A DNA stretch of 64,000 nucleotides from Cyanophora paradoxa CCMP329. Lineage: Eukaryota; Plantae; Glaucophyta. Position numbers and translations under genes: made by a program. The stretch's first letter is position 1. The number at the start of each line of letters is the position of its first letter. The notes under the pieces were generated by a model. The model worked only from the letters and a program-made list of their open reading frames with translations. It had not been told where the DNA came from and made no database searches. The stretch spans positions 434,001 to 498,000 of the forward strand of contig QPMI01000542.1 in NCBI GenBank assembly GCA_004431415.1. Direction: 5' to 3'. Of the stretch, positions 4,449 to 48,400 are shown in pieces.

Positions 4449-5680
4449 CCATTTATATATATACTAGTAGGTCCTCACTCGCGATCGCACCCGCCTGCGG
4501 TCCCTGTCTCTAATTCATGTCTCTATCGGTGATGTCTCTAATTCAACAGATCCCAGTCAAGTGCTCGCTATATATGCGTAGCGCCGTAGGCCCGGCCGGG
4601 CCCGCGGCGGCGCGGCCGCCAGACTCAAATTTATATATTTTGCAGCACCGAAACCGAAATTAATTATGAATGGAACGGCGAGCGCTAGCCGCGCGGCGCG
4701 CGCGCCGCCCGCCGCGCCTCCGTCCCGCCCGGGCCCGGCCCGCCGGCCCGCGCTCCGCCTCGCCCGCCGAGCCCCGCATGCGCAGCGCTAGCCGCCCGCC
4801 CCGCCCCGGCCGGGTCCGACTCATCCCCGCGGCCGAGCCGCGCAGACGCCTGCGCATGCCGCGCCGCCGCCCGCCGCGCCGGCGCCTCTGCCCCGCCCGG
4901 CGAGCCGCGCCGCCGCCCGCCGCGCCTCCGCCGCGGCGCCTGTTGTCCGCGGCCCGGTGAACCGCGCCTCCAACCGTTGAACCGCCGCGCGCGCGCGCCT
5001 CCGCCCCGCGCGCCAATTGCAAGCTGCGCGCAGCTGCGAGCTCGAGCCGCGTCGGTGTATACGTATACGTACATGTTCGCCGTATACGTACGCGTGCTCC
5101 GCCCGATCGATATCGCGACCCGCTGAGGTGCACGTGCTCAGACGCCGTTGCGCGCCCACCGTGGCACCGACAGCCTGGCCATGGCAGCTGCAGATCTAGA
5201 CCGGCCGCTATTGCAGTGTGTGCGCGCGCTCCCGGCCCGTCCCACCAATTGCAAGTGAGCCGCGCGCGCCGCTAGCTATATAGCGCTAGCGCTGCGCATG
5301 CGCCGCGGCCGCGGCGCCCCTATAGCTAGGCCGGGGGCCGCGTATACGTACGTTCGCCAAGTTGTTGTTGCGCTGTGCCACGGTGCACGTGCGCTGTGCA
5401 TGTACATGTGGCGCATAGCTAGTACTGGCCAGAAGCCCGGGGTACCAGGAGTACTAGGGTACGTCTGGTACCCCGGATAATCCGATGATCGGGGCCGGAT
5501 TTGGCCATATATATATATATATGCTCAATGCTCATATGCATGGACTCCGGATCCGGCCGGCGCCCGAGCTCTCCGCGGCCGGGTCCGCCGGAATCCGGAT
5601 CGACCGTCACGGCGTCGGATGGCTCGAGCTCGGATCAAGTCGACGTCAGTCGGCCCGCCGCCGGCCGGCGGTCCCCGGCG

Positions 5681-6162
5681 TAGGGATATGGCCGGGGGGT
5701 CCGACCACTGGCCAGCGGCCCAGCCCAAGCCGCCAAAGCTCAGCCGCTGGCCCGGCCGGGGCTGGCCGCCAGCCTCCAGCCAGAACTTGGCCGGCCAGCT
5801 GGCGGCCAGCCTCTTACTAGGAGTCCGGGGCTTGGTCGGCCAGGCTGGCCAGCCGGCCAGCCGTAGAGCCCGTCCTGTTTAATGAAAGCCTTGACACAAA
5901 CCCTAGCTATCTTTTCTCTATTTCATAAAAGTTGTTAATAACAAGCGCTGTTGATATTAGCAAGTCCCCCCGTCAAGCCCCACCTCTAGCCTCGAGCCTG
6001 CACCCCAGCCAGCCCCTCTGGCCGGCTGGCCGCCTCATAAAGCCGAAAAGGGCTGGCCCGGCTGGCCGAGAAATTCGAAATCGCCGGGCTGGCCCGGGGG
6101 TCAAAGCCTTATGCCAGCCGGCCAGCTGGTCGGCCAGACGTCGACCAGCGGCCATATCCCTA
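5681..6162. mobile_element. hAT-type MITE (482 bp)
   Basis: 14-bp TIR TAGGGATATGGCCG...CGGCCATATCCCTA; perfect 8-bp TSD CCCCGGCG (5673-5680 and 6163-6170); no ORF. Confidence 0.9.
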
Positions 6163-6696
6163 CCCCGGCGGCGGACCCTCGCCGAGTCGGTCGGCGTCCG
6201 ACGGTCGGACAGGAGGCCTATATATAGCTAGACTCTCGAGTCTGAGACTGATCGATTAATAGACTGACGGCAACTGTATCCACATTGTGGAGTAGTACTA
6301 GTAGTACTAGTAGACCTGTAATTTGTGGAGGTACTGTATAGGGCAACTTCTCAGCCGCGAATTACCGCGGCACCAATTGCAAATTACCGCGTTTTAACAG
6401 ACTTTTGGCGCGTTAATATTAATTTGGTACCGGTACCGCGTTAGTTAAGTGCCCACGGTACTGAAATGCGCGCCCGACGGTACCGGTGCACGTACCGCGC
6501 CGGGGCCGTTGAAGTTAGTTAAAAACGTTGCGCAGTTTTGGCGAAGTACTATTATTTTCATGTACTAAATTAACTTGCAGTACTATGATATCGAGATATA
6601 GAATATCATAGTATATCAGCATAGTATGATGCGGGCGCCCGCACTGCCGCGCGGCAGTCCGACGCAGTCGGCAGCAGCTGGCTGCAGCTAGCCTAG

Positions 6697-7258
6697 TAGG
6701 CTTGCGGCTAGCGGGGCCGCGGCCCGCGGGTCGGCTCGAGCCAAGCCTAGCCAGCCCGAAATTCGGCTCGAGCCGCTAGCAAGCCGGCGCCGGCTTGCGC
6801 ATGCCTCGACCCGGGAGTCGAGCGCCCAAAATTTAAAACCCCGGGCCCTTCGCTACCTCTAGGCTCTAGCCGGCTTGCCCGGCTCGCCTCCTTCGAATTC
6901 CGCATTTTCAAGCTCCTCCCCCCATCCGCTGGCCCGCCATGCAGGCCGGTCTAGCGCTAGCCCACGGGGCTTGCCCCTAGGCCTCCGGGTAGCTGCCAGC
7001 CTGGCAGGCTAGCGCTGGCGGCTCTGATAGCGCTAGCCTCCCGGCCAGTCCGTCCAACCAGCTGCAGGCTAGCCCCCCCGGCTAGCTATAGCAAGCCGGC
7101 TGGCCATGGCGCGGCGTCTCCCCGCGCGCGCTAGCCGGGCTTGCGAGCCAGCTCGACTTGCGAGCGCTAGCCAAAACGACGGCTCGATCGCGAGCCGCCC
7201 GCCAAAGTCCGCTAGCCTAGCCGGCTGGCTAGCTGGCTAGGCTCGAGCCGCAAGCCTA
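6697..7258. mobile_element. hAT-type MITE, second family
   Basis: TIR TAGGCTTGCGGCT...AGCCGCAAGCCTA. Candidate 8-bp TSD GCTGCAGC at 6681-6688 and 7259-7266, with an extra 8 nt (TAGCCTAG) between the left TSD and the TIR. Many internal GCTAGC/GCAAGCCG motifs. Confidence 0.7.
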
Positions 7259-7322
7259 GCTGCAGCTAGCTAGCGCTGCATGGAAATCGATTTCCTGGGT
7301 CCTGACTCCTGAGTCCTGACTA

Positions 7323-7550
7323 CCGTGTAATACTTAATTACCGCGCTGACATAACTACTGCGCTACCATATTACTGCGCTCAAAAGTTTTAGAACGCAGT
7401 AATTTAGTAGCGCAGTAAATGTCTTTTGCTAACACTTTTCTATGGGCGGTTTGATAAGAACGCAGTAATTTGGTACCGCGCTAAAGCGCCTACCGGCGCA
7501 GAAATTTTAGAACGCAGTAATTTGTGGCGCGGTAATTAAGTATTACACGG
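7323..7550. mobile_element. Tc1/mariner-pogo-type MITE
   Basis: TIR CCGTGTAATACTTAATTACCGCG...CGCGGTAATTAAGTATTACACGG, flanked by TA on both sides. Confidence 0.88.
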
Positions 7551-7552
7551 TA

Positions 7553-7830
7553 CCGTAGAGCAGGAAAATATATAGTGGGCCGGAAATTAGTGGACTAGAA
7601 AACTTGGCCCTCCCTTAGGCAAAATACTGGAGCCCGAAATTAGTTGACCAAAATCTTGTCAGGCTTGTTTGGGGCGGTAGTTTTGGGGGGTACTGTATAA
7701 GGCAGCTTAGCAGCAGGGAAAATTGGGAAATACTGGAGCCCGAAATTAGTGGATTGAGTCAAGTTTTCGGTCCACTAATTTCGGGCTCCGGCCACTAATT
7801 TTCTGCGTCCAGTATTTTCCTGCTCTACGG
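7553..7830. mobile_element. Tc1/mariner-pogo-type MITE, abutting the previous one
   Basis: TIR CCGTAGAGCAGGAAAATA...TATTTTCCTGCTCTACGG, flanked by TA; shares TA 7551-7552 with the upstream MITE. Confidence 0.88.
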
Positions 7831-9779
7831 TACTGGACCCCTGGCCCATGGGATCGCCGAGAAGCTGGGTCCCGGAGGTTCCCATATATAATTATAAGCT
7901 TTCAAAGCCAAGCCACCGAGCTGGTCCGGCCGACTCCCGGAGTCCGGCGAGCATATGCGGCCGCCGCCGGGCGCCATGCATGCAAGGGCGCCATCATGGC
8001 ATGCGCATGCGCGCAAGTTTCTCATGATCACATTAAAGAAAAACACATTATTCTAGACGGTGATTCGTTGTGAGTATGTCCATGATTTTTTCGATTCCCA
8101 ATCAAGTTGCGCGCATTCCACCAATCAGCAAGCTTGATACCGCGCGGACACGGCGACGTGTAAGTGCACGTGCACGCAAGCGCACGCACTGCAGCTGGCA
8201 GCTGCCAGCCTGGCCATGGCAGCTGCAGTCCCTGCCACTGCCTGCCACTGGCTGCCAGTTCCGGCCATCCCACGTGCATCACGGTGCATGCGCACGGGCC
8301 GACGCGTACGGTCCCCACATATGCATAGCGCGGTACGGTAATTTGTAACCGGCGCCGGCCGCCGCGGCCGGCGCCGGTGTCGGACTCTCGCCGAGTCGGT
8401 AACCCTATCTCGGACACCGGGACACGCGGCCGGCCTGGCGCCGGGCGGCCCGCCGGCCGGGCCCGCGGCCGGGAGGCCTAGCCTAGTAGGCGGGCGGCGC
8501 CGGGCCCGGGCCGGCGGCCCGCCCTGCCCGGCGCGGCCGGCCCGGGAAACTTCGGAACTTCGGAAATCGGCCGCGGCCGCGGCGCGGGGTCATGAATCAT
8601 GATCACTCAGTGACTGAATGACGATCGAATCCCCAATTCCCGATTGCAAATCTATAAATATACATATGACAATGTGTACTATCACATACTATGATACAAT
8701 CGCAAGTATTATAGTATATATATGACTCAGTTTTCGAGTTAAAAAAGAAAGTTGACATTTTACAGAAAGACTGTTGCCGCAGAGCAATTGGCCCAAGTTT
8801 GGGACCCGCGGACCCGCGCGCGCGGCGCCGGCGGCGGTCCCGCGCGACTCCCGCCGAGTCCCGCGGGCGGCCCGGCGCGGGACGCGATCGATATCGACAC
8901 CGCGCGCGCGAGTGCGCATGCGTCGCCGAGTCGGCGCGGACCCGGGAGTGTACATGCCATGATGTCATGCAGACTGATATCGATCATGCGAGTCATCATG
9001 GCATGCGATGATCATCATGGCATCGGATGCAGCCTGGCAGTGGCCCGGCGGCCGCGGGCACTATGTACTAGTTCTGTCACAGTGTGGCACAGTGGCACTG
9101 CGGCACCCTGGGGTCCGAACTGACGCTCGCGGGGACCCGGGAGTCGGCCCGGCCCCGGCGGCCCGGCCGGGACCCGGTGAGTGGGTAACTAGCTCTAGGC
9201 TCTAGCCTAGTAGGCTCGTAGGGAGCAGCAGCGCCGGCAGCAGCATCCGCTGCAGCGCAGCAGCTTACGAAGCTATACTAAGTTACAGCAGCCTTACAGA
9301 CGCCCCCACCGTGGCACTGGGGCCACTCGAACGCATCAGCCTGGCAGCGGCATCCCGATCGGCTCTTGTCCACCCCGCCTGCACGGAAGGCCGACTTCCT
9401 AAACGTATATTTCAGGGCTTCCACGCACAAATTCGGGCCAAGTGCAGATCTAGAGTGCAGCTGACAGGCTTGGCGAGTTCAATACCGTCGCACTCTTCTT
9501 AGCTCCGATCCAGTTCTGCAGGCCGACCTTGGCTAGATCGTCGCACATATACCAGTTTTTGGATCTGGATCTGGACCGGATCATCCTGTAACGATAAGTC
9601 GCGTTGTTCGACTTCTACGTATACGCGGTGCGCATCCGTAACTCAAATGCGCATGCTGCAGCTGGATCTTTTCGAACGCGGAATTCAAAGTCGGCCTAAA
9701 GCTTTATATGCAACCTGTTACCATGGCCAGTTGATAATCACTCACGCTGTGAACTGCTACACAGATCGCTGAAAGAAAT

Positions 9780-35633: not shown

Positions 35634-38419
35634 AGTACACGCCACGGCGGTTCGGTCTCCGCCTGAGCAGAAATTAAAAGACCAGTGGTGGAGGAGTTCG
35701 GATTTAATTCGTCGCGAAGAGGGGTGGGCCCGGCGACGTGGCGGCGTGTACTTGTAATTTTTCAGCTGCAGCCAGAGTTCGAGTTCTTGGCAGAACAGCT
35801 GCAGCTTCGCGGGGCTGGATGGTGCACCTGCGAAGGCGGCGGCCTTTCTTCACAGTCGATCGCGAGGCTGGTGGCGAATTCGAAGAAGGCGTCGCTCCGT
35901 TCCGGTGAACCGGCGTTCAAGCTGGAGATGCGGACCTGCCCGAGGCCGGGGCAATACAGGAGGGCATCGGATTCAGCTGTGGGCGGGTGGTGTCAGCCGT
36001 AGAGGGCGGGAGGCCCGAGGACAAGCTAGAGGCGCGGACCTGCTCGTGCCAGGATGGCGCTCAGGACAGCTTTAACCCAGTCGGCACCCAACCGAACAGA
36101 GACCGGAATCGGCCCTGCATAAGACGAACGCGAGCTCAGCGTTATCGTCACCGCGGGGTTACTAAATTCGAGTCAAGCGTGTCTCGGCGTGGCGTCGTCG
36201 GGATGCAACCGTCTCGCGAGGAGCGGGCTTGCAAGAAGCAAGAAGAAGACGTCAAGGCAAGCGCACCTCCCAGGACGGATGGAACCGGCCTTGATCGTGC
36301 TCGGAATTGGAGAAGGGGACGACGGAAGCATGTGGAAGTCGCTCAGCTGGCGGACGGGGCGTAGTGCACTACGACTCCTCGTCGGCTGCAGTCGGCACCG
36401 GTGCAAGTCGTGCTCCTGACCCGGCGGAGGATAGAGCATCCCCGGCGGACATTCTGGGTCTTCGGACTCGATGGGCAAGTGCACCTACCGCCGGCGGGCA
36501 CACAGCAACCGTCAACTTCGCTGTGCGTCCGACCGCAATTTAATTCTCGGGTCGAAATCGGCGGAGGATCTCGTCAGGCGGACTGATAACAAGGGCGGAA
36601 ATTTTGGAAGTGCTCGACGCGGCGGCGTTCGCGCTCTGATGCACAGGATTTCCTCTCTTCTCGCCGCCTACAGATTCAGACGCAGGCCGGAGGGGCCAGA
36701 CTTCGCACGTTGTCGAGGGCGCAGCTTCGTCTGCAAGGCCGACATCAATTGCGAGTCAGCGGGGGCGCAGCCTATAGCTAGTCAATGGGGCTGACCCTCA
36801 AGTCTCGGCTGGGGCGTCCGGCCGTGGATCAAGGGCAGTGCCTGCGGTCCCGGAGGCTTCAGCTCGAGAGAGGGCGGATGGGATCCCAGCGGATGGCCCA
36901 CCGTCCGAGGGAGGGGAGAGCTGTGCAGCCTGGTAGCTGCAGCTTCGCAGTTGTACATATCGTGTACATATCAGCCGCAGCGCGCGGCGAGCTCGAGTAG
37001 CTACGGATAGAGTAGCGAGCTCGGGAAGCATTCGGATTTCACAGCTGCAGACAGGACCAGCTGTGCGACGTCTGGATCATTTCTAGGTCCAGCGGAAGCT
37101 GAGGGCACGCCTTGGAAATATTTCCTTAGCTCAGAAACGATTCGAAATTTTTTCGCAACGTTGGACATATATTTCTGATAGCATTAGACGTCTACATATT
37201 TATTTTATTGTAGATAGCGCAGCCTTCGTGCTGCTAGGGCTGTAGTGCAGCCTTCGAGCTGCTAGGGCCGTCAGGGCGTTAGAACGCCTCGGCCACCTTT
37301 TCTTGTAAATAGTCAGAGTCGTTTTCGATCGATATCGATATCGGACTCGACGTTTTGCTGCGACGAACGTCGCGGGCGGGATGGAGGCGCTGAGGACGGC
37401 TTTTCTCTGCTGCGACGAATGTCGCGGGCGATGGCAAGACCAAGTCTGGTTTGAGATTGGTCGGCTGGCCAGGGGCCGGGCCCGGCGTGGCCGCGGGCCC
37501 TGGGCCGGAATCCGGCTATAGGCGTGGCCGGTCGCGACTTGACTTGCAATTCCCGGAATTGCCGGAATTCCCGGAATTCCCGGAATTCCCGGAACCCAAG
37601 CCGGAACCCAACCAATAAATCGTACATGCTCAACAACTAGAAAATACTTGCTAGTTTGCAACGCGGGCTAGTATAAGTAGCCGCTGCCCTGCCAAAGTTG
37701 TCATTCCTTGTGAGGCGCACAGCCTCGAAATACTAGCAGCGAAACTCTGCCATTTTGCATCTGTAACTTGGGAGCACATCAGGGGCGGGCTAAGCATTAA
37801 GGGAACATCGTCAGGGATCAGAGATCCAGGGGCGGGCTAAGCATTAAGGGAACATCGTCAGGGATCAGAGATCCAGGTCTGTAATTACTCTGTTATTAGG
37901 CCTCTGGTTACAAACCCCTAGACTATATCTGGGCCTTGCCCGGATTTAACCAGAATAAACGCCGCGGGCCCTGGGCCGGAATCCGGCTATAGGCGTGGCC
38001 GGTCGCGACTTGACTTGCAATTCCCGGAATTGCCGGAATTCCCGGAATTCCCGGAATTCCCGGAACCCAAGCCGGAACCCAACCAATAAATCGTACATGC
38101 TCAACAACTAGAAAATACTTGCTAGTTTGCAACGCGGGCTAGTATAAGTAGCCGCTGCCCTGCCAAAGTTGTCATTCCTTGTGAGGCGCACAGCCTCGAA
38201 ATACTAGCAGCGAAACTCTGCCATTTTGCATCTGTAACTTGGGAGCACATCAGGGGCGGGCTAAGCATTAAGGGAACATCGTCAGGGATCAGAGATCCAG
38301 GGGCGGGCTAAGCATTAAGGGAACATCGTCAGGGATCAGAGATCCAGGTCTGTAATTACTCTGTTATTAGGCCTCTGGTTACAAACCCCTAGACTATATC
38401 TGGGCCTTGCCCGGATTTA

Positions 38420-38991
38420 TTTTTTTTTTTTTTTGGTGAATTACCGGCCACAGTCTCTAGACACCAGCACTGCGGGGGCTGCCCAGGGGGCATAAAGACA
38501 AAAAAGCAAAATAACTAAGACAAGAGCACGAAGAAAGATAAGACAAAGAGCCAAAATCGACAATAAAAAAGGAAAGACACAGAGCTCGAGACAGATCGAT
38601 AGCGAGAAGAGACGATAAATCGAGCAGATCTAGGACAGAGGATAACTGACACGAAGAAGAGCCAGAGCTAGAGATACCATCAATATCAGAAGGAATTACA
38701 TCACTAAGAAGCGGGGGACAAAATTGAGAAAGATAAATAACAGGAAGAAGACAAGTAAGAGGAACAACAAGACGACATGGAGGCGGAGGCGAAGCAGGAC
38801 GATGCGAAAGGGCAGAGCTACGGCACGAGGTCGAGGAGGACACAGGAGGCGGAGCAGGCGGATCAAGAGCAGGCAAAAGGACAGTCAAAGGAATCACTAA
38901 AGCCGGCCAGGGTCGAGGCGGGCAATCGAACTGCAAACGACGGCGAACAACAGGTCGAGCACGAGGACTATAGCTAGTATTGAAACTAACT
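38420..38991 (-). mobile_element. Poly(A)-tailed non-LTR retrocopy (SINE or 5'-truncated LINE) inserted in the LTR
   Basis: T15 at 38420-38434 on the + strand; 9-bp TSD CCGGATTTA (38411-38419, 38992-39000); the LTR resumes exactly at 39001. Confidence 0.88.
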
Positions 38992-39395
38992 CCGGATTTA
39001 ACCAGATGCTTAATAATTTGTAGCAACCATATACATCCCCTCATCGATAATTATATAAGATTCGTATGCGTGTCACTAACTGAAAGCGCTATAGCTAGCT
39101 GAAAAGCACGTCGAACTTAACACGTCGAGTCAGCATTGTAATTGAATAAAAGCACTCGTGTCGGCGCTTCATCTAAGAATATGAATAGGCCTAACTGGGC
39201 CTGTTGCAGAATACCCTCGAACGAGTATTTGGCCTGTATATAAGCCTAACAGAGAACTCGTCAAAACCCTGCAGAAAGAAAGCGAAAAGTACTTGGAATT
39301 TTCGGAGATGTTCACACACATGCATCCTTTTTCTAAGCATGAACAAACGAATAATAACGCATTACGTAAGTGAGAAGGTAGAAAGATTCGACGCA

Positions 39396-41339
39396 TTACT
39401 GGAGGGTGCAGGACTTCTCCTCCTCGACGGCCGGCGCCGGCGGCGGAAGGGGCGCCGGCAGCCACGTAAAGGGCTGAGCCCGGAGCGGCGTCAGCCTCGA
39501 GCTCCAACCTGGAGCGGCATAGCCGGCACTGACCTTGACGTTCGCGACGGCGGCGTCGATGTGGCGGCAGAGGCGCGCGATGCACTCCTCCTGCATGCTG
39601 TTCACCCAGAAGAGGGCGTTGTGGCGCGGGAAGTTCGCCATATCGGGCGGCAAGCCGGCCGTCGACGGGAAGCGCTGCCGCGGGTCGTCCACCAACGGGA
39701 TGATCGCCTGCGCGCGTGCGGGCCGCGGCCGACGTCAGTGCCGGCGGCTCGAGCCGTGTGGCGTTGCATCGGACCTTGCCGAGGTGGCACGCCTCCGCGA
39801 TCTCGCGGCGCACCCTGCACGAGGCCGGCGGTCAGAGGAGAGGGACGAGCGACCCAGCTCCTCGCCCCAGCCCGCGCACCAGTCCTCGAGCTCCTTGCAG
39901 CGTTCGAGCGTGCCGTCCACCAGGATGAAAGCTTTGCGAAAGCTTTCAGGCAGAGGCCGACCGTCGCAGCAGGAGGCGCGGAGGCTCTCGAGGATCTTCG
40001 AGTCGAAGACGCCGCCCTGGAGGCTCTGCAGGTCGAAGAAGACCTTGTAGCTGAGGGGCGTCGAAGTCAGAGGGGCGGCGACGGAAGCCGGCGCCATCGG
40101 TATCGCGTACCCCTGCCGCTCGAGGGCCTCCCGCACGAGGGAGGCGAGGTAGTTCCTCCCGTCCAGCCGCCGGTACGTGATGCTGCACCCCGTCAGCGGG
40201 CAGATCGGGCGCGGGGCGCGGGCAGGAAAGCAATCGCGCACAAGACGTGGTACACGTAGCCGGGAGGGAGGGGCGGGACGCGCGAAGCGGGGCCGTACCC
40301 CGGCGTGGGGCTGTAGCCGGGCGTGGGGCTGTAGCCGGGCGTGGGGCTGTAGCCGGGCACGGGCGCGGGGTGGCCGCCTCGGAGGGCGGCGATCTCGGCG
40401 AGGAGGCGCTGGCGGGCGCCGAAGTGCGCGACGCCCATCCGCTCGAGCTCGCCGTCGCCCAGGGCGAGCAGGGCGACGCCGTTTGTGAACCGAAATGCCT
40501 CCGCGAACCTGCCGGCGCCTCACGGAGTGAGGCCGGGCGGGACGGCGAGAAGGGAGGCGAGATAACGGGAAGCGGTGATGGAGATGGGCGGGAGAGTGAT
40601 GACGCACTCGGCGAGGGGGCCGCGGGAGCGGACCCACGCGACGACCTCGTCCTCGATCCACGCGCGCGCGTCGCCCGATGGAGGTCGCAGGGGGATGGAG
40701 CGGCAATGTTCCATAATAGCACGGCACTGCGAGGACCCTCCTCCAACGGATATGCTACGACGGACAGGCTCCGGCATGGCCGTGAGGGGGTTGTTGGTGA
40801 CTAGCAGCTCCTCTAAGGCGGCGAGGCGGCCGATCTCCGGCGGCAGCGCCGTCAGCTGGTTGAACTGTAACCACAGCTTTTTCAGGGAGGTAAGGCGGCC
40901 GATCTCCGGCGGCAGCGCCGTCAGCTTGTTTCCGCCCAGCCCCAGCTCCTTCAAGGCTGCGAGGCGGCCAATCTCCGGCGGCAGCGCCGTTAGCTGGTTG
41001 TCGTTCACGCCCAGGTGCTGCAGGGCGGCGAGGCGGCCGATCTCCGGCGGCAGCTCCATCAGCTGGTTGCCGCCCAACCAGAGCTTCTCCAGGTTCGTGA
41101 GCTTGGCGAGCTCTGCCCCCGGGATGCGCATGAGCTTGTTCCCTCCGAGCTGGAGCTCGCGGATGTTCTCGGCCCCCGCTGCCGCGATCTCCGCCGCCGG
41201 CCACTCCCTCCGCAACCCCCCGCCAAGATCCAGCCTCCCCTCCCCCGGGATCCACCCCCTGCCCATGCCTGCGGGGCGGTCAGCGGCAGAAGCGCGGAGC
41301 CCCCCCCCACAGGCCCGTCCCTGTCAACTCGCCTCGCAT
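39396..41339 (-). CDS. LRR-SAM-TIR protein with SARM1-like TIR and C-terminal CaaX (CTLQ)
   Basis: Six ~23-aa LRRs (LxxLxLxxNQLTALPPEIGRL); SAM (WIEDEVVAWV..NGVALLALGDGELERMGVAHFGARQRLLAEI); (PGYSPT)3 linker; TIR YHVFITYRR..LASLVREALERQGYKVFFDLQSLQGGVFDSKI..DWVRREIAEA..IIPLVD..LPPDMANFPRHNALFW; ends EEKSCTLQ*. Start is 41339 (via a GC-AG intron) or 41266. Confidence 0.85.
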
Positions 41340-42409
41340 CTTAGCCGACGGGCCCGCTCCCGCTGCTTCGCTTGGTGGGAGCCGAAAGCGGCCTAGCAGT
41401 GGCTAACAAGCTCCACGGCGCCCTGTGAGGCCGAGAGCGAAGCGATCCCTAGGTTCTAGACCGAGATTCGCGCGCCCGGCACCAACTAACGGCAATCCAG
41501 GCCATTCGCCCGCCCGGCGTCGCGCACCTTCGACGAAACGCCTTGACGCAGCGGTGCCGAGCTTTCGGAACCGACGGAGCCCGCCCGGTCAGAAGTTCCT
41601 CGGTCGCGCGCTGTCTGCTGACCTGGCCGTTCGCCCGCAGCGCAGTGTACGAAGCTACAAGTGAGCTGTGAGCGAGCGAGAGGCGGCAATGCCAAAAAAC
41701 CGCCGGCTTCGCACCTGCCCGGCGATTCCCCGAAGATTCCCCTGTACCCCCTCAAGATAGCACGCGGCTGCACGGCTAAGCACGCCGAAGCACGGCTAAG
41801 CACGCGGAGCACGGCGCTAAGCACTGCTGCGCGGCACGCGCGCCGGCGGCTTGCACGCGGGATCGACAGGCGTAGGACAGGCCTAGGCCTAGGCGTACCG
41901 CGCGCGACACGAATCGAGGACGCCCGCAACGTGCCCTCAGCGCGGTGAGTGCAGACACGATTTGCATTAGCACACAACCACAACTACTAGGAGTTTCACA
42001 TCGCCCAATTTATCTCTCCGACTAGATAACACTGAGGACCGTCGAGTGCTGTGCTCTGTCTAAATGGTAGGTTTGGTGCTGGGCTATCTGTATATCTAGC
42101 TACACTGGAGGTCTGAAATAGGTTTGTAGCTAGCTTTAGCTATAGGTAGCTATTTATCTGTCGCTAGCGCTAAGTCTGATCTGCAGCTATTTTGATTTGT
42201 CTACTAGGGTCCCTGAAAGTGAAAAGGAAAGGAAAGTAGCTAGGGATCCCGGCTCCCGTCTGCAGGTGTATACACCCCGATCGATTTTCGCTGCTCCTCG
42301 CCAGCCCCAGCCGGGTGGGCTACTGGCTCGCCTCCGCCTCCGCTGTCTTGGTGTTGCCTCCCCGTGCCCCTTATGAGACCCCCCCCCAGATAGCGCCCAT
42401 TTTATCCCT

Positions 42410-45400
42410 TCAGCGCGGCCTGGTCCGCGCCGTGCCCACGCCCCAATCATACCTGTTGGTGTGGTCGTACAGCTGCATCGCTTCGGCAGCCGCTGCCCAG
42501 CCGTAGTCCTCCGGGGGACAGTTCAGCGATGCGTATTCCAGGTTTTCCCCACCGCCGCGGTGCCTGGACATTAGCGCGTGGCACGCGGCGCACCGTTCTG
42601 TGCACCGCTCCTTGGTCGGCTGGCCTCGGCGCTGCCGGGATGGCCCTGCCGCGGATTGATCAGACTCGCCTGCCGCCTCGCGGACGCGCGCCTCGGTGCG
42701 TCTTCGCTTCGCGCGGCGCTCTTTCATCACCTTTGTGATCCCGCACGCTTTCTCCCACTCAGCGTAGGCCTTGCAGCGGGCGGCCCACGTCTTGTGGGCC
42801 TGCTCGCCTATCGCCGTTGTCAGCTTCCGCGTGACCTCGGCCGCCAGCTTCTCGTCCGGGATCGTCTCCCGGACCATGTCGGTAAGGCCCGCAGGCGGCA
42901 ATCCACGGAGCACACAGATCTGTGTTCGTCGTTCTAGCGGCGTGAGCGTCGGCTCGTTCACGCGCGTCACCTTGAGCGAGTTGCAGAGCGCTTGCGGGAG
43001 CGACCGCTGGAGCGGCTTCGCGAGCGCACCGCTTACAACAGCTGATATGCTTGCTTCTGCCGCAGCGCGCGCTTCCACCGCTACCGCGCTGAGGCACGTG
43101 AGCATGTGCTCGAGCGTCTCCTCCGTACCAGCGACTAGTCTGGGCGGCCGGCAATGTCTTGCTGCCGTGTGCCGCAGAGCACGCACAGCCCGTTTGGGTT
43201 CACCTCGCTGTACAGCTCTGGCGCGTCCCGCTTGCGGACCAGGGCCGTCGCCACGGTACCCAGCACCAGTTTCACATGCGTACCCCGGTAGCAGTTGCTT
43301 TCCCGGCTCACCCCGACGCGGCGGGGTCCCATCGCCATCTGATCGTACACAGCGCCGTGATCGACCGGCTCCCGCAGCCACTGGCCTGCCTGCGCCTGAT
43401 TCGACCAGGCGAAGTGCGTATGATGCGCATGCAGCACTGCGGCGTGCCTCCGGGGATCGCCTTCGACCCGCCTCGCGGTTCCGTCCGACCCCTCGATCGT
43501 CAGGACCGCCGGCATGCTGAACTCCGGCGGCAGGAAGATGCCCTCATCGATCTCCGGCTGGTCGAGCTCCCTGGCGAGCTTCGCGGCGGCGTCGGCACGG
43601 TTGTTCATCTCATCAGTGCCGTGCGCTTTGACCTTGACTAGCTCGATTTCCCGGCTGTGCTCACGCTTCGCCAGGATGGCCCGGAATCTGGACCAAGCGT
43701 AGAGCTCGGCGCTGCACGGGTGGCGGACGTAGTCGCGCGCGTGCTTGTGGTGCGCATTCTGAACGAACTGTTTGTACCACGTGCAGACGTTCTGACTGTC
43801 CGTGTGCAGCCGCAGACCTGTAGGCGCGAGCACGTCGGCGACGATCGCCGCCTGGAGCTCTGCCTTGTTGATCTCCTGGAGGCCGCGGAGCCGGCCGTAC
43901 AGCGTGGACTCCTCTCCTTCCGGATTGAGGGGCGCAACATCCGGTGCGCGGGCCGGAATCACTATTCCAAACCCCGCTCGGGCATCCGCTGTCTGACCGG
44001 CCCCCAGGCTCCCGTCCGTCCAGATGTTCAGCTTTCCTTCCGTCTCGGCGTACCGAGCGAGTTGTTCCGTCTCTGCCTTGGGCCACACTTCCAGCAGGTG
44101 CTGCCAGTACAAGTTTTCGGTCCCGCCGTGCTGCAGATCGCGTGTCCATGTCTTGGGCCCCCCGCCCGTGTAGTAAAGGTCGCGCCGTTCCGCAGATTTC
44201 GACACGGGGCGGGCCTCGTCCCTCGGCTCCGTGCTCGGCGCCGCCGCCGCCGCCGCGTCCAAGGCTACGCGCAGGTCCTCCTCGGCCTCGGGGCTCAGCT
44301 CCTCGCGGAGGAAACGTGGGTCCTCGTCCTGGACCGCCTTCACGCGGGCCTGGCGGAGGAGCTGCTGGCGTCTCTCGTCTTCATTCAGTCCGGGATCGTA
44401 GTACTCGAGCGTCATCCGCCCAGCGGCCCCTTGCGCCCTCGTCGCGACTTCGTCTCCCGGCTCTCTCCGGCGACTAGATACGTCTCGGGTTCGCCGCCCA
44501 AGCTCAAGAGGGTGTCCTCTTCCTCCCACCAACCCTCACCGTTTGTCCAAGGGCCGTCGCACTGACTCATTTCCGGGCAGCGTGCCGGGATCGGGTGCTT
44601 ACACCGCTCGTCGTGGTGCCAGTACATCTTTCCGGAGCCGGGGACTGCCGTGTACGTTTCCGGGCGCCCCTTCACCTTCTCGTGCCTGCAGTGACCGTCG
44701 CACCGGCAGTAGAGTCCGGGCTCGCTCCCGTCGGCTTCGGGGTCCGCGCCGCTCGGTATCGGCACCCAGTGCTCAAGCAGGTATTCGAACGCAACGATGC
44801 TGCCCTCCGGCGCCCTCCCTCTGACTACCCGGCCCACGTAGGGCAATGCAGCTTCATCGTGGAGCGCCTCCGCCTCGAAGACGGCTACGAAAGTCCCCGG
44901 CGTCCACTTGACCTTGCGGGCCCCGCCGGGGAGCGAGGCCATGGCCGACGCGCGCGTGCCCGCCCTTCGCATCGGGTGCCGCAGCTTCTTTCCGTCTACC
45001 GTGAGCGCTCCCACCAACTCTCGCCACCACGCAGGCTCGCTCTGCTGCAGCGTATCCTTGGGGGCCTGCGTCTGCAAGTCTCGCCAGGTGCGCACGGTCT
45101 CGCCGTCCGCAGCGGTCACCGCATCCATCGTCACTGCGCCCGCCTTGTACAGCGCGGGGGCCGCTACTCCAAAGATCGAGCTCGGTATGTGCGTCGCGAC
45201 GACGTAGCGTCGGTCGAGCCGCTCCGGATCAGGCCAAGGCGTCGTCCCGGGCATGGTGCGGAACGCCGCGTAGCGCGCGTGGTTCGACACCAGCCTGTAC
45301 TTACGCCGCTGCATCTGCGGCATGATCGCAGCCAGGGAGTTCCCGCGGGTCAGTCCGCTGGAGACGGGCGCATTCAGGAACTCGGTCGGGAGCAGCGGCA

Positions 45401-48400
45401 CGCCGAGGTCCTCCTGCAGCGCGCGCACTCGGTGCCGGACCGCCTGGGCGAGCAGCGAGCCCTCGGGTGCGCAGAGGCGGATCTGTGCCTCCGCGATCTG
45501 AGCCTCGGCCTGCAGGTGCTCGGTCCTTTTTAGGCTGTACCCCCCGTGGCTCCAGATCACGTAATTCGTCGTCGAGGCGGCGAGGTTCGCGTGGTGCTTG
45601 ACCACCCTTAGCCAGATGCGATCTAGCTCCTGGCACTGACCCTCGCTCAGGGTCATGAGCTTCAAGCCGTACGCGATTCGGGCCTGGACTACGGCCTCGA
45701 CAAGGTAGCAGGCCTCGTTCGTGGTGAGCTTTTTACGCTCTATCAGCGCCACGGCTCCTCGCGCCTGATCGCAGATGTACTGCCACTGACGATCCCAGTT
45801 CAGGTTCGCGCTCATATGCACCCCGAGGAGCTTGAAGTGCTCGTGGGGCTGGCGGACGAGCCCGACGGGGGTACCGTTAATCTTCGGCGGGGAGGGCCGC
45901 TTCTCCTTCTTCTTCGCGGCGGGGTGGGCCCCGGTTTGCTCTCAGTCTCGCGGCGTGCGTTGTTCCACGTGAAGATCGTCTTCTTCGCGTTGACCTCGAT
46001 ATCGTGCAGGCGGAAGAATTCGCCGGCCACGTCGGCCTGGGCCTGCAGCCCCCGCAGGCTGCCGCTCATCCACTTCGTGTCGTCGGCGTACGCCACGCCG
46101 CTGACGCGGGCCCGGGCCGCGCGTTCCGCGGCGTCTGTCTCTCTCGGGTTCCCATTACGTACGCTGTACCCGGCTCCTCCGCCGTCTCAGGGTGAGCATA
46201 TTGCTCTATCGTTTTCGCCACCTTCTTGCCGCACTCTCGCTCGTGCTGATCCATCCGCACTTGCGCGCAGAGGAGCGCATCGTAGAAGATCAGCCAGTGC
46301 AGCGGCGACTCGACGCCGCCCTGCGGCAGCCCGCACTCGAGCTCGAATTCGTCCGAGAGGCCGTGCCCCGAGATCGCCCTGGCCCGACGGCGTCGGAATA
46401 TGTTCCTGTGGAGCTCGATGTACCCTCCGGTACGCGCAGCCTCCGCATCGAGAGCTCCATGCTCTCCCACGAGACGGAATCGTACGCGCGCCTGATATCC
46501 TGCAGCAGGACGTAGACGGGCTTCTTGTACTGCTTCGCGTCCTCGAGGACTGCGTTAAAGACGTGGAGGGCGTCATCCGTCGAGCAACCAGGTCTGAAGC
46601 CGTAGTTGGCGCCCCTCAGGAACCCGTTCTCATGTATGGTCCGGGACAGGCGCGCGTTCAGGAGGCCCGTGGTGAGCTTCAGGGCGACCTCCTGGAGGGT
46701 GATCGGCCGCAGGTTGTTATCGATGTCTCCGTCCCATTCCCCTTGCTTCGTGATGCCAAGGATGTTGCCCTGACACACGGCGTCCGGCATGTCCCGCAGG
46801 CGGATCGCCTCCGCCACCAGCGAGAGCAGCAGCTTCCGGCCCCAGTGGACCGGCTCGCCCTCGGCAGCCCCGTCGGGGCCCCCATCCTCCTGTTCGGGGC
46901 GGGCGGGGGCCGCGCCCTTTGCCCCTTTGCCCTCGCCTTCCTCCTTTTTCTTGGGCACTTCCGCCCACAGGAACTTCACCATAGCGTACGAGAAGTTAGA
47001 CGGCCCTGCCGCCGTGTTCCCCAGCGTCTTAATGTACTCTCCGAGCTCCTGTTCGCTCGGCTCGGCCATGTCCCTTGCGTATTTGGCGGGGTCAACGTAG
47101 TCTTTCGGCTCGTATTCAAGCCTCCAGAAGTCGAGCAGCGCCCTCCCTGCGCTGTCCTTCAGCACGCTTTGAGGCAGTGTTTCCACCGTGCCCCCACTCG
47201 GGGTTGCCGGCGCTTGCACCAGGATCGCCAGTGCTCTTTCAGCAGCCGCTTCACTTCGGCAGGCTCGTTGTAGATCTCGTACGTCTTTCCGTCTCCTGAC
47301 ACCCGAGTGATATGCATGATCGGCCTGTTTCGGGGCTTCTCTAGGACCGAGGCGATGTAGGAGCCTAGTCGGCGCCCATCCATGAAGTTGTCTAGCCTGT
47401 TTTTGAGGGCCTTCTCTATTTCGCCTGCCTGCAACGCGCGGCGGATCCTCTGCAGATCGTGCCGCGTTCGGTTCTGCCATGTCTTGAGCTCTCTAAAGAA
47501 GGTCGCCCAATCTTCTTTCAGCTGCCGCCGGCGCGCAGCGGCCCAGTCATTGTCAACTTCAGCGTCCGAATTCGAAGTTGAATTCGAAGTCGAATTCGCG
47601 ATCGGCGACGATGGCCATGGGGGGGAGGACTGGGACGGGGGGGACGAAGCTGGGGTACCGCCTGCAGCTGGCGGAGATCGAGATCCGCTCGAGCTTTGGG
47701 AGTTACGTGCGTCGTCCTGGCTCTGGCTTTGGGGCCACGAGCCTTGTGCACGAGCCCGCCTTTCAGCCGGCCTCAGCGGGAACGGCCGCAGGCCTTCCTT
47801 GTCCGTCACGTAGCTCTGCAGCTTTTCTACTGCCAGGATCGTCTGCTCCGACGGAACCCCGCTGGATTCCTTGTTCCAGGCTGCCAATATGCGGGCGACC
47901 TTGGAGTCCACCTTCGCCTGCCACGGCAGGTTGCGCGGCTTGGTCGGCTTCCCGCCCCGGCGCCTCATGCTTAGATGCTCCTTTGCCACCTCCTGAACAA
48001 GTGTGGCGCTCGCAGCGTGGATTCGGGCCAGGCGGTCGAGGCGCTCCTCCGGCGTTCCCTGGCCGACCGACTCCAGGTCCGACCCCAGTGCTTCCCCGAG
48101 CTTTTTGTTAAGCTCTCGCTTCAGCTCATCCTTCTGCTTCAGCGTCCGCTTCAGGCCGTCTGGGTCGAAGACCGGCGGACCAGGCTTCGGGGTGGGCATC
48201 GGTCCCACCGGCGCGATCAGCCCGGCGCGCTCCAGGTCGAAGTCCGCGAGCACCGGGAAGTGATCCGAGTCGTGTGGCGCATCGACCCAAGTCGGGCAGG
48301 CGTGCACGCTGAGGAGCGCCTCATCGAGGGCCTTCGACACCACCACCGCATCGATGCGCGCCGCGTGCCAGAGTGCGTCCTTCGGCAGATTCGCGGGGGC

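What the first reader, a model, noticed from the sequence alone, without database searches (positions are those of the whole stretch)
39396..41339. SARM1-like TIR NADase with an LRR sensor in place of ARM repeats, plus a prenylation signal
Seen: the spliced product is LRR x6 - SAM - (PGYSPT)3 - TIR - CTLQ*. From memory of SARM1, the TIR aligns motif by motif: VFITYRR vs VFISYRR, LASLV vs LASLL, GYKVFFDLQSLQGGVFD vs GFSVFIDVEKLEAGKFE, DWVRREI vs DWVHKEI (catalytic Glu retained), LPPDM vs LPEDM. Established: SARM1 is ARM-SAM-SAM-TIR, and SAM-driven oligomerisation activates NAD+ cleavage. Inference: this is a cytosolic, membrane-tethered receptor-executioner in a unicellular eukaryote, with ligand-sensing LRRs coupled directly to SAM-TIR. 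I do not know of this architecture being characterised.
Basis: partly seen in the sequence, partly recalled or inferred. Interest (0 to 1): 0.9.

Follow-up and report, generated by a model that had tools for sequence, protein, structure and literature searches.

The report
Algal LRR-SAM-TIR gene, SARM1-type TIR
A real, spliced and transcribed gene of a glaucophyte alga (almost certainly Cyanophora paradoxa) joins a leucine-rich-repeat sensor, one SAM domain, a SARM1-type NAD-cleaving TIR domain and a conserved lipid-anchor signal, an uncharacterised arrangement that belongs to a family of 20 or more genes in this genome.

Summary
On the minus strand, 41266..39396, a seven-exon gene of 486 codons encodes six 23-residue LRRs, one SAM domain, a PGYSPT x3 linker, a TIR domain and a C-terminal CTLQ.

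Three corrections:
- The coding start is 41266; the ATG at 41339 is an out-of-frame uORF.
- There is a sixth intron, 39474-39533.
- The TIR carries a gene-specific 11-residue loop insertion.

RNA-like runs show introns 1, 4 and 6 spliced. The LRR-SAM and SAM-TIR junctions lie inside exons, so this is one gene.

The TIR is of the SARM1 type. The closest paralog hits only SARM1/TIR-1 among solved structures (2e-20). A subfamily profile scores SARM1 at 6e-47 and the next TIR class at 1e-6. The catalytic Glu is invariant.

It is not a SARM1 orthologue: it has one SAM, no ARM repeats, and its nearest outside TIRs have prokaryote-type architectures. All close relatives are Cyanophora paradoxa proteins. 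Four of them also end in C-x-x-Q.

NADase activity, prenylation, oligomerisation and an immune role remain inferred. The scan flagged sibling LRR-SAM-TIR genes on other pieces of this genome. The joined protein was not searched or folded; exons were searched separately and paralog P0002 stood in.

The parts
40608..41266 (-). Exon 1: start codon (41266), N-terminal cap, six LRRs, short linker, first helix of the SAM domain
   Evidence: Open frame from the ATG. Pfam LRR_4 4.9e-23. RNA-like contigs cover 40606-40846 and 41041-41217. The N-terminus MG[KR]GW.PAEG is shared by many paralogs.
40745..41164 (-). Six 23-24-residue leucine-rich repeats of the SHOC2 / Leptospira LIC type
   Evidence: Repeat parsing. 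69-bp tandem periodicity. Best solved relatives are LIC11098, LRRD1 and SHOC2. Concave-face positions 2, 3, 5, 7 and 8 have 2.4-3.4 bits of entropy across 92 family repeats; most scaffold positions have 0-1.7 bits.
40509..40607 (-). Intron 1 (99 nt, GT..AG, contains an in-frame stop); it splits the SAM domain
   Evidence: The joint is seen in X1, X3 and X4 (two studies). The DNA-like run X17 is contiguous here.
40242..40508 (-). Exon 2: rest of SAM, PGYSPT repeats, PPxY motif, first residues of TIR strand A
   Evidence: Pfam SAM_1 1.5e-4. 65 of 88 residues identical to P0002 116-195.
40373..40666 (-). Single SAM domain (interrupted by intron 1)
   Evidence: The SAM of the other subfamily (P0005) matches SARM1 SAM1 at 1.6e-6. 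The SAM of this subfamily is more divergent: best solved hit aveugle 0.005, SARM1 0.99.
40289..40358 (-). 18-bp tandem repeat, 3.9 copies, coding PGYSPT x3 plus PGYGPA
   Evidence: Tandem Repeats Finder, 94% matches. Translation.
40256..40276 (-). PPLPPGY: a PPxY motif eight residues before the TIR FITYRR strand
   Evidence: Same motif at the same spacing in paralogs P0001-P0009, P0023 and P0177.
40183..40241 (-). Intron 2 (59 nt, GT..AG); splits the VFITYRR strand
   Evidence: Splice letters. RNA-like contigs in X1 and X3 end exactly at 40182 and continue into exon-2-like letters of a paralog (table 7). Not seen as a clean joint.
40111..40182 (-). Exon 3: TIR strand A and helix A (ITYRR...LASLV...)
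   Evidence: hhalign to the TIR profile, probability 96.4%, profile positions 16-36.
40051..40110 (-). Intron 3 (60 nt, GT..AG, in frame, no stop)
   Evidence: Splice letters. Paralog proteins lack these 20 residues. An RNA-like paralog contig lacks exactly 60 nt here (tables 5 and 5c). Splicing of this copy itself was not seen directly.
39880..40050 (-). Exon 4: TIR strand B, BB loop, helix B, strand C, start of helix C (...ELEDW)
   Evidence: hhalign probability 98.8%, profile positions 39-84. Weak direct hit to the SARM1 TIR.
39930..39962 (-). Gene-specific 11-residue insertion (GRPLPESFRKA) between helix B and strand C
   Evidence: Gap against all 79 profile sequences and all paralogs. Retained in the spliced RNA-like contig X1 record 3, 39879-39991, with 0 differences.
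39815..39879 (-). Intron 4 (65 nt, GT..AG)
   Evidence: Joint in X1.
39775..39814 (-). Exon 5: VRREIAEACHLGK, with the catalytic Glu codon at 39802-39804
   Evidence: 13 of 13 residues identical to P0002 268-280. This Glu aligns with the Glu of SARM1 WVHKEI and is invariant in 79 sequences.
39708..39774 (-). Intron 5 (67 nt, GT..AG)
   Evidence: Splice letters. Colinear with P0002 280/281. X1 record 2 stops at 39709 with 16 unplaced letters, which is consistent with splicing but not proof.
39534..39707 (-). Exon 6: TIR strand D to helix E (AIIPLVDD...LPPDM...)
   Evidence: hhalign probability 99.1%, profile positions 99-154. Direct hit to C. elegans TIR-1 at E 0.04.
39474..39533 (-).
   Evidence: Joint in X1, X3 and X4. 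Its removal makes the tail colinear with P0002 339-363.
39396..39473 (-). Exon 7, coding part: Pro-rich tail, EEEKS, CaaX-like CTLQ (39399-39410), stop TAA (39396-39398)
   Evidence: 18 of 25 residues identical to the P0002 C-terminus. C-x-x-Q is the last four residues of P0002, P0007, P0008 and P0011.
39000..39395 (-). 3' untranslated region (at least this long), AT-richer than the gene
   Evidence: RNA-like contigs in X1 and X3 run from the intron-6 joint through 39000 and beyond; the X4 contig reaches 39086 (table 8).

Best explanation
This is an intact, transcribed, seven-exon nuclear gene of a glaucophyte alga, almost certainly Cyanophora paradoxa. It encodes a 486-residue cytosolic protein with this layout: N-cap, six SHOC2-type LRRs, one SAM domain, a Tyr/Pro-rich linker (PGYSPT x3, then a conserved PPxY), a SARM1-type TIR domain, a Pro-rich tail, and a CaaX-like CTLQ.

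Shown here:
- the gene model and its expression;
- the domain order;
- membership of the TIR in the SARM1-type subfamily, with the catalytic Glu and the Y-R-R and D-W motifs intact;
- conservation of the C-terminal C-x-x-Q in paralogs;
- concentration of variability on the concave LRR face across the family;
- membership of a lineage-specific family of 20 or more LRR-(SAM)-TIR genes.

Inferred working model: the LRR holds the protein inactive and/or binds a trigger. On activation, the SAM domain and the TIR's own interfaces bring TIR domains together. That assembles the active site around the Glu, and NAD+ is cleaved. Whether the outcome is NAD+ depletion or a cyclic-ADPR-type signal cannot be told from sequence. 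A farnesyl group on CTLQ places the assembly on a membrane. The likely role is cell-autonomous defence or regulated cell death, functioning like an NLR in which SAM replaces the NTPase oligomerisation module.
For: Gene and transcript:
- All splice sites are GT..CAG and introns are 59-99 nt.
- Introns 1, 4 and 6 are spliced in RNA-like runs X1, X3 and X4. These runs give no cover over most of the upstream spacer. The DNA-like run X17 is contiguous across the whole region.
- Domain junctions lie inside exons 1 and 2, and introns lie inside domains.

Domains:
- LRR and SAM.
- TIR, exon by exon against the profile.

TIR type:
- The TIR of paralog P0002 hits only SARM1/TIR-1 among solved structures, at 2e-20. 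In the TIR exons the window gene is 15/23, 43/56, 13/13 and 51/58 identical to P0002.
- Profile A1 scores SARM1 at 6e-47. The next TIR class, TIR-STING, scores 1e-6.
- The AlphaFold2 model has pLDDT 90. The top 36 Foldseek matches are all SARM1/TIR-1, with target TM about 0.9 and rmsd 1.7 A.
- The catalytic Glu is invariant in 79 sequences.
- The SAM-TIR module of sister subfamily member P0005 hits full-length SARM1 at 1e-32 through both domains. Its nearest ESM Atlas clusters are Ect4/SARM1.

Anchor and family:
- CSVQ or CTLQ forms the exact C-terminus of five family members, with differing upstream sequence.
- All close relatives are C. paradoxa proteins. Some are encoded by neighbouring genes on the same contigs.
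- The Cyanophora TIRs form one clade, SH-aLRT 99.
- LRR concave positions carry 2.4-3.4 bits of entropy; most scaffold positions carry 0-1.7 bits.
- No stretch is hydrophobic enough for a membrane span.
Against: - No enzymatic, lipidation, oligomerisation or infection data exist for any family member.
- This copy alone carries an 11-residue insertion next to strand C. Its effect on fold or activity is unknown.
- The SAM of this subfamily is divergent and single. A test of SAM self-pairing gave no answer.
- The residue aligned with SARM1 His685 is Asn here. This reading is by eye from the alignments.
- Splicing of introns 2, 3 and 5 of this exact copy was not seen as clean joints.
- The run type 'RNA' is the tool's guess, although the spliced joints support it.
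- The joined protein itself was never searched or folded.
Confidence: 0.6

Rival explanations
1. The TIR acts as a non-enzymatic assembly or adaptor domain, as in TLR and MyD88-type signalling. The protein would then be a membrane-associated scaffold that recruits other TIR, WW or RING proteins of the family.
For: The family includes TIR-WW (P0009), LRR-SAM-TIR-RING (P0177) and ZZ-SAM-TIR (P0022) members. A PPxY motif sits at a fixed distance before every SAM-linked TIR. This suggests a protein-protein network.
Against: The catalytic Glu and the surrounding D-W...E and Y-R-R motifs are invariant or nearly so across 79 members of the subfamily. That is hard to explain without catalysis. The only solved relatives are NAD+ hydrolases.
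Confidence: 0.12
2. The protein is an active NAD+-cleaving enzyme, but its role is not pathogen defence. It could be a metabolic or stress sensor, or a developmental or cell-death switch at a membrane, with the LRR serving only as an autoinhibitory or partner-binding module as in SHOC2 and Roco proteins.
For: The LRR is of the SHOC2 / RSU1 / Roco cytosolic type. SARM1 itself is chiefly a metabolic sensor (established knowledge; see 10.64898/2026.04.20.719644).
Against: The family is large, with neighbouring genes on the same contigs, and is lineage-specific. Variability is concentrated on the LRR concave face. This is the usual signature of receptor families in conflict with pathogens. That pattern is suggestive only.
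Confidence: 0.2
3. This particular copy is a decaying paralog. It is transcribed, but the 11-residue insertion in the TIR core region has crippled it.
For: The insertion is unique among 79 TIRs and all paralogs. It contains a small direct duplication (AAAGCTTTC twice). It lies at the edge of strand C in the paralog model.
Against: The 486-codon frame is intact across seven exons. All splice sites are canonical. The mRNA is spliced and keeps the insertion in frame. Strand C can be re-formed by the residues that follow the insertion (AFILV).
Confidence: 0.08

Closest known systems
SARM1 / TIR-1 / Ect4 (animal ARM-SAM-SAM-TIR NAD+ hydrolases)
   Same: The TIR subfamily is the same. Among solved structures only SARM1/TIR-1 are hit: 2e-20 for the single sequence and 6e-47 for the profile. 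The paralog model matches at TM about 0.9 and 34-35% identity. The catalytic Glu, the Y-R-R strand and the D-W motif are conserved. A SAM domain lies directly upstream of the TIR. The SAM of subfamily member P0005 matches SARM1 SAM1.
   Different: It has one SAM, not two. It has LRRs instead of the ARM NMN/NAD+ sensor. It has a CaaX-like C-terminus and a PGYSPT / PPxY linker. The loop before the D-W motif is three residues shorter. Asn sits where SARM1 has His685. This copy has an 11-residue insertion. It is not an orthologue, and its position relative to animal SARM1 in a tree is unresolved.
TIR_2 (PF13676) proteins with prokaryote-type architectures, found in metagenomes
   Same: These are the nearest TIRs outside Cyanophora, at 80-113 bits and mostly 35-47% identity. 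They score above human SARM1 (76 bits). The motifs are the same.
   Different: Their partner domains are FGE-sulfatase, Sel1, SPFH, CHASE2, DO-GTPase, STAND ATPase or kinase. None of the 17 sampled has LRR-SAM. The Cyanophora TIRs form their own clade.
Toll-like receptors (LRR - transmembrane helix - TIR)
   Same: An LRR sensor and a TIR output are combined in one polypeptide.
   Different: There is no signal peptide or membrane span. The LRR is of the cytosolic SHOC2 type. The TIR belongs to a different class: TLR TIRs score 5e-5 or worse against the profile. A SAM domain lies between the two parts. Any membrane contact would be through a lipid anchor.
Plant TIR-NB-ARC-LRR receptors (TNLs) and other NLR/STAND receptors
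   Same: LRR plus a catalytic-type TIR, in an expanded gene family some of whose members are neighbours on a contig. The logic of induced TIR proximity is shared.
   Different: No NB-ARC, NACHT or other NTPase domain was detected. The domain order is reversed, with the LRR first and the TIR last. Plant TIRs score only about 3e-5 to 2e-3 against the profile.
SHOC2 / LRRD1 / Leptospira LIC LRR proteins
   Same: The 23-residue repeat has the same LTxLPxEIGxLxxL scaffold.
   Different: Those proteins lack SAM and TIR. The E-values are inflated by the repeats, so this names a repeat class and not an orthology.

Membership tests
SARM1-type TIR subfamily (TIR_2, PF13676) | Sequence and profile match to the TIR domain over its full length | tested here: met
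   Window exons 3, 4 and 6 match profile A1 colinearly at probability 96-99%. Exon 5 is 13/13 identical to P0002. Paralog P0002 passes the TIR_2 gathering score, 32.5 against 28. Single exons are too short for Pfam.
SARM1-type TIR subfamily (TIR_2, PF13676) | Closer to SARM1/TIR-1 than to any other structurally characterised TIR class | tested here: met
   Only SARM1/TIR-1 are found at E<=1. The profile gives 162 bits for SARM1 and 31.6 bits for the next class. The top 36 Foldseek matches are all SARM1/TIR-1. These tests were done on paralog P0002 and profile A1, not on the joined window protein.
SARM1-type TIR subfamily (TIR_2, PF13676) | Catalytic glutamate (SARM1 Glu642 position) present | tested here: met
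   The Glu of VRREI (codon 39802-39804) aligns with the Glu of SARM1 WVHKEI through P0002. It is invariant in 79 sequences.
SARM1-type TIR subfamily (TIR_2, PF13676) | NAD+ hydrolase activity | not testable with these tools
   Needs an enzyme assay.
SARM1 orthologue (ARM-SAM-SAM-TIR) | Two tandem SAM domains that form the octameric ring | tested here: not met
   There is one SAM in the window gene and in the paralogs scanned.
SARM1 orthologue (ARM-SAM-SAM-TIR) | N-terminal ARM-repeat domain with the NMN/NAD+ allosteric site | tested here: not met
   The N-terminal half is six LRRs. No ARM match was found.
SARM1 orthologue (ARM-SAM-SAM-TIR) | Groups with animal SARM1 in a TIR tree | tested here: inconclusive
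   No animal SARM1 sequence could be obtained under a reference. Human SARM1 scores 76 bits, below more than 150 other representatives. The Cyanophora TIRs are one clade among the 79 sequences.
CaaX prenylation substrates | Cys at position -4 with Gln as the last residue, at the true C-terminus | tested here: met
   CTLQ followed by TAA. The frame is confirmed by the spliced contigs across intron 6. CSVQ ends P0002, P0007, P0008 and P0011. That Gln as the last residue favours farnesyltransferase comes from established knowledge, for example yeast Ydj1 CASQ.
CaaX prenylation substrates | The protein is actually prenylated, and the organism has the transferase | not tested
   No lipidation data. 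The farnesyltransferase genes of the organism were not looked for.
Toll-like receptors | Signal peptide, extracellular LRR and a membrane-spanning helix | tested here: not met
   The highest 19-residue Kyte-Doolittle mean in any exon is 0.93. The N-terminus is not hydrophobic.
NLR / STAND receptors | Central NB-ARC, NACHT or other STAND NTPase domain | tested here: not met
   No such Pfam match in any exon or in paralogs P0002, P0003, P0005, P0007 and P0023.

The most novel reading that the evidence does not exclude
Cyanophora carries a complete NTPase-free immune receptor class. A hypervariable cytosolic LRR senses a pathogen cue. A single SAM domain polymerises the receptor on a membrane, to which it is held by a farnesyl group (or, in sister members, by N-terminal acylation). 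The clustered SARM1-type TIRs then cleave NAD+ to kill or arrest the cell. On this reading the SAM-TIR executioner module of SARM1 is not an animal invention. It would be an old eukaryotic, or repeatedly captured bacterial, cassette that different lineages wired to different sensors: ARM in animals, LRR in glaucophytes.
Probability: 0.3. Interest if true: 0.8.

Novelty: new variant of a known kind. Interest (0 to 1): 0.6.

Why it matters
SARM1 is the best-understood NAD+-destroying executioner in animals. Its SAM-TIR core is usually discussed as an animal feature with bacterial affinities.

Here the same TIR type, again directly behind a SAM domain, is wired to a different sensor (LRR) and to a lipid anchor. 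The host is a glaucophyte, one of the three primary-plastid lineages and one with almost no described immunity.

If the proteins are active NADases triggered through their LRRs, three things follow:
- They would be a natural experiment in how TIR enzymes are controlled without an ARM domain or an NTPase.
- They would give a first handle on cell-autonomous defence in glaucophytes.
- They would inform the debate on the origin of the SARM1 module.

The family's side branches (RING, ZZ, WW, LRR-TIR without SAM) and the fixed PPxY motif offer testable wiring hypotheses.

Tried and rejected
1. Pfam on single TIR exons gave nothing; the pieces are too short. Profile-profile comparison per exon was used instead.
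2. Exons were searched separately by reference. The closest paralog, P0002, stood in for PDB search, folding and profile work. Its identity to the window's TIR exons is 15/23, 43/56, 13/13 and 51/58.
3. The window's own protein was not found in the protein collection. All hits were paralogs.
4. SAM self-pairing was tested with complex prediction on P0002 residues 92-162, two copies. The result was no answer, score 0.00. This is no evidence either way.
5. A profile search (A2) was run to obtain animal SARM1 sequences under an id for a tree. It returned only Cyanophora proteins. The SARM1-inclusive phylogeny could therefore not be made. A quick tree of 79 TIRs shows only that the Cyanophora sequences are one clade. 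The careful tree search did not finish in the time allowed.
6. A 30-33-nt micro-intron as the explanation for the 11-residue insertion was rejected. A spliced RNA-like contig keeps it.
7. The ATG at 41339 as the start was rejected. It is out of frame and runs into a stop after 19 codons.
8. N-myristoylation of MGRGWIP is judged unlikely. Arg after Gly2 and Pro at position 7 violate the usual pattern (from knowledge, not tested).
9. Rfam and tRNA scans of 38000-43500 gave nothing.
10. Literature searches for LRR-SAM-TIR, SARM1 with Cyanophora, Cyanophora or glaucophyte with TIR, and the supplements of a 2026 survey of eukaryotic TIRs found no description.
11. A search for further paralogs inside the window with tblastn found only this locus.
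Full report
**What is there**

The finding lies on the minus strand. Translating the three minus-strand frames of 39300-41400, together with the ORF list, gives a seven-exon model. All six introns start with GT, end with CAG and are 59-99 nt long.

| Part | Coordinates (minus strand) |
|---|---|
| Exon 1 | 41266-40608 |
| Intron 1 | 40607-40509 |
| Exon 2 | 40508-40242 |
| Intron 2 | 40241-40183 |
| Exon 3 | 40182-40111 |
| Intron 3 | 40110-40051 |
| Exon 4 | 40050-39880 |
| Intron 4 | 39879-39815 |
| Exon 5 | 39814-39775 |
| Intron 5 | 39774-39708 |
| Exon 6 | 39707-39534 |
| Intron 6 | 39533-39474 |
| Exon 7 | 39473-39399, then TAA at 39398-39396 |

The exon lengths sum to 1458 nt, which is 486 codons. 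Every search on the window's own gene was made exon by exon, by reference. The joined-protein HMM search and fold were left out.

**Is it one transcribed gene?**

One call of read laying on 39000-42400 compared three RNA-like runs (X1, X3, X4; two studies) with a DNA-like run, X17.

- X17 covers the whole stretch without gaps.
- The RNA-like runs give no cover over most of the upstream spacer, 41394-41960. The exception is the bin 41508-41621, which has depth in X3 and X4.
- The RNA-like runs carry contigs that skip exactly intron 1 (all three runs), intron 4 (X1) and intron 6 (all three runs), each with GT..AG ends.
- Intron 1 contains an in-frame stop, so it must be removed.
- Introns 2, 3 and 5 were not seen as clean joints in this copy. 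Contigs end exactly at the exon-3 acceptor (40182) and continue into paralog-like exon-2 letters. A paralog contig lacks exactly the 60 nt of intron 3.
- The 3' UTR runs at least to 39000.

The LRR-to-SAM junction lies inside exon 1 and the SAM-to-TIR junction lies inside exon 2. The introns lie inside the SAM domain (intron 1) and inside the TIR domain (introns 2-5). A contig in X4 spans 241 nt of exon 1 plus 53 nt of exon 2.

**Domains**

- *Exon 1* gives Pfam LRR_4 4.9e-23, LRR_14 and LRR_8. It parses into six 23-24-residue repeats. Its nearest solved relatives are Leptospira LIC11098, LRRD1 and SHOC2, the cytosolic LTxLPxEIGxLxxL class.
- *The SAM domain* begins at the end of exon 1 and continues through the first 45 residues of exon 2. 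Exon 2 alone gives SAM_1 1.5e-4. The homologous region of paralog P0002 gives SAM_1 6.8e-6.
- *The linker* follows: an 18-bp tandem repeat of 3.9 copies coding PGYSPT x3, then PPLPPGY.
- *The TIR* is spread over exons 2-6. Single exons are too short for Pfam. Exons 3, 4 and 6 each match a 79-sequence profile of the subfamily (A1) colinearly, at hhalign probability 96.4%, 98.8% and 99.1%. Exon 5 is 13/13 identical to P0002. Even as raw pieces they find SARM1 and TIR-1 as the only TIR proteins in the PDB, at weak E-values of 0.9 and 0.04.
- *Membrane spans:* no 19-residue stretch is hydrophobic enough for one; the maximum Kyte-Doolittle mean is 0.93.

**Relatives and organism**

Word-indexed searches found only proteins named tig..._g....t1 from EukProt. 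An exact look-up identifies these as EP00741 Cyanophora paradoxa.

None is the window's own product. The closest are P0002 and P0007. Identities to P0002 by exon are:

| Exon | Identical residues |
|---|---|
| 2 | 65/88 |
| 3 | 15/23 |
| 4 | 43/56 |
| 5 | 13/13 |
| 6 | 51/58 |
| 7 | 18/25 |

The exons lie colinearly on P0002 residues 116-363. The window is therefore almost certainly C. paradoxa or a very close relative. Run names are coded, so this is an inference.

The family holds at least 24 proteins, with these architectures:
- LRR-SAM-TIR: P0004-P0007, P0010, P0023;
- LRR-TIR without SAM: P0011, P0013-P0017, P0019;
- SAM-TIR: P0008;
- ZZ-SAM-TIR: P0022;
- TIR-WW: P0009;
- LRR-SAM-TIR-RING: P0177.

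Several members are encoded by neighbouring genes on the same contigs. The window holds only this one member. First-stage notes of this scan list four more LRR-SAM-TIR loci on other pieces of the genome. These are unchecked notes, but they agree with the EukProt paralogs.

**Is the TIR SARM1-like?**

Yes, as a subfamily.

- The P0002 TIR hits 19 distinct PDB sequences at E<=1. All are SARM1 or C. elegans TIR-1, the best at 2e-20.
- The alignment places VFITYRR on VFISYRR, the BB-loop region on FIDVEKLEAGKFE, and DWVRREI on DWVHKEI.
- Profile A1 scores SARM1 at 6e-47 (162 bits). The next TIR class, oyster TIR-STING, scores 1e-6 (31.6 bits). Plant, TLR, AbTir and SPARTA TIRs score lower.
- An AlphaFold2 model of the P0002 TIR has mean pLDDT 90.2. 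Its first 36 Foldseek matches are all SARM1/TIR-1, with target TM 0.8-0.93 on the TIR-only chains and rmsd about 1.7 A for the best. RUN1 follows at about 0.57.
- The catalytic Glu is invariant in all 79 aligned sequences, as are the F, Y and first R of the FISYRR motif, a Cys, and the Asp of DW.
- In the sister subfamily (P0005) the SAM also resembles SARM1 SAM1, domain E 1.6e-6. The SAM-TIR module hits full-length SARM1 at 1e-32. The nearest ESM Atlas clusters are Ect4/SARM1.

**Is it a SARM1 orthologue?**

No. There is one SAM, not two, and LRRs where SARM1 has ARM repeats.

- In an exhaustive search of 1.84 billion representatives, only Cyanophora proteins and one metagenomic protein reach E<=1e-30.
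- More than 150 representatives score 81-113 bits, above the 76 bits of human SARM1.
- Seventeen non-Cyanophora hits were sampled. Their TIR is fused to FGE-sulfatase, Sel1, SPFH, CHASE2, DO-GTPase, STAND ATPase or kinase domains, or to no other detected domain. None has LRR-SAM. I read these architectures as mostly prokaryotic; that is an inference.
- A quick maximum-likelihood tree puts the ten Cyanophora TIRs on one side of a branch with SH-aLRT 99. This fits a single origin followed by expansion.
- I could not place animal SARM1 in the tree. No SARM1 sequence could be obtained under a reference.

**The C-terminal signal**

After intron 6 is removed, exon 7 reads as a Pro-rich tail ending EEEKSCTLQ-stop.

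- The last four residues of P0002, P0007, P0008 and P0011 are CSVQ. The residues before them differ (EEKS, KKNS, AKRQ, EEKS).
- P0011 carries a different TIR type.
- A Cys fixed at position -4 of the true C-terminus in five diverged members argues for selection on a CaaX box. A terminal Gln favours farnesyltransferase (established knowledge, for example yeast Ydj1 CASQ).
- Sister members that end in ...LPAPLA instead begin MGGC or MGGG (P0023, P0005). These are classic N-acylation contexts, which suggests that membrane attachment is a family theme. That is inference only.

**LRR variability**

Across 92 repeats from the window gene and 19 paralogs, positions 2, 3, 5, 7 and 8 of the LxxLxLxxN strand carry 2.4-3.4 bits of entropy. 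These positions form the concave face. Most of the scaffold positions (1, 4, 6, 9, 11-21, 24) carry 0-1.7 bits; positions 10, 22 and 23 lie between. This is the pattern expected of a binding surface under diversification on a homogenised scaffold. It is not a test of selection.

**What is peculiar to this copy**

- An 11-residue insertion (39930-39962) lies between helix B and strand C. It is absent from all paralogs and from all 79 profile sequences.
- The insertion contains a small direct duplication.
- A spliced RNA-like contig retains it, so it is not a micro-intron.
- Its effect on the fold is unknown.
- The Pro/Ala-rich spacer between LRR and SAM is much shorter here than in P0005 or P0007.

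**Most likely mechanism**

Shown: the architecture, the expression, the TIR type with an intact catalytic centre, the conserved CaaX-like end and the variable LRR face.

Inferred, step by step:
1. The LRR keeps the protein off and/or binds a trigger.
2. SAM and TIR interfaces cluster the TIR domains.
3. The clustered TIRs cleave NAD+.
4. A farnesyl group localises the assembly to a membrane.
5. The outcome is growth arrest, cell death or a nucleotide signal.

Sequence cannot tell whether NAD+ is depleted or a cADPR isomer signal is made. A recent survey found cADPR-producing TIRs in several protists but did not include Cyanophora (10.64898/2026.04.20.719644). A prediction of SAM self-pairing gave no answer. 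It counts neither for nor against.

**Novelty**

The gene models of the paralogs are public and their domains are detectable with Pfam. I found no paper that describes an LRR-SAM-TIR protein, a SARM1-type TIR in glaucophytes, or this family. The library searched is limited to open-access papers and bioRxiv.

I class it as a new variant of a known kind: a SARM1-type SAM-TIR module with a different sensor and a lipid-anchor signal, in a lineage-specific receptor-like family.

Noticed in passing
window 41959-42070: A 110-nt, AT-richer element with very high summed depth in the RNA-like runs (about 3,700-9,400, against about 10-20 for its neighbours). In the DNA-like run its depth is about 240, against about 12-30 nearby. 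There is one copy in the window and no Rfam or tRNA match. It may be a dispersed, highly transcribed repeat or an undescribed small RNA.
   Followed up: partly
window 41280-41339 (minus strand): A 19-codon upstream ORF (MRGEL...) ends 13 nt before the main ATG and is out of frame with it. The paralog model P0003 starts with the same MRGEL. RNA-like cover here is low but not zero.
   Followed up: partly
window 40256-40276, and paralogs P0001-P0009, P0023, P0177: A PPxY motif (PPLPPGY) sits exactly eight residues before the FITYRR strand in every SAM-linked TIR of the family. One family member, P0009, is a TIR-WW fusion. WW domains bind PPxY, so members may pair through this motif. Untested.
   Followed up: partly
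paralogs P0177, P0022, P0009, P0011 (no window coordinates): The family has side branches fused to RING fingers (P0177), a ZZ finger (P0022) and a WW domain (P0009). A large LRR-TIR branch lacks SAM and has a different TIR strand A (FVSYAH). One of its members, P0011, still ends in the same EEEKSCSVQ tail.
   Followed up: partly
paralogs P0023, P0005 (no window coordinates): Family members that lack the C-x-x-Q end begin with MGGC or MGGG. These are typical N-myristoylation or palmitoylation contexts, a possible alternative membrane anchor.
   Followed up: no
window 43138-44535 (minus strand): A long open frame with a Pfam RNase_H match at 4.9e-12. It lies next to another 509-codon open frame (44415-45941, minus strand) that has no match. 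This may be a retroelement remnant upstream of the gene.
   Followed up: no
window 40824-41279: Summed contig depth over the LRR repeats is 10-100 times that of the rest of the gene in all runs. The cause is words shared with many paralogous LRR genes. It shows how large the LTALPPEIGRLAAL repeat family is in this genome and transcriptome.
   Followed up: no
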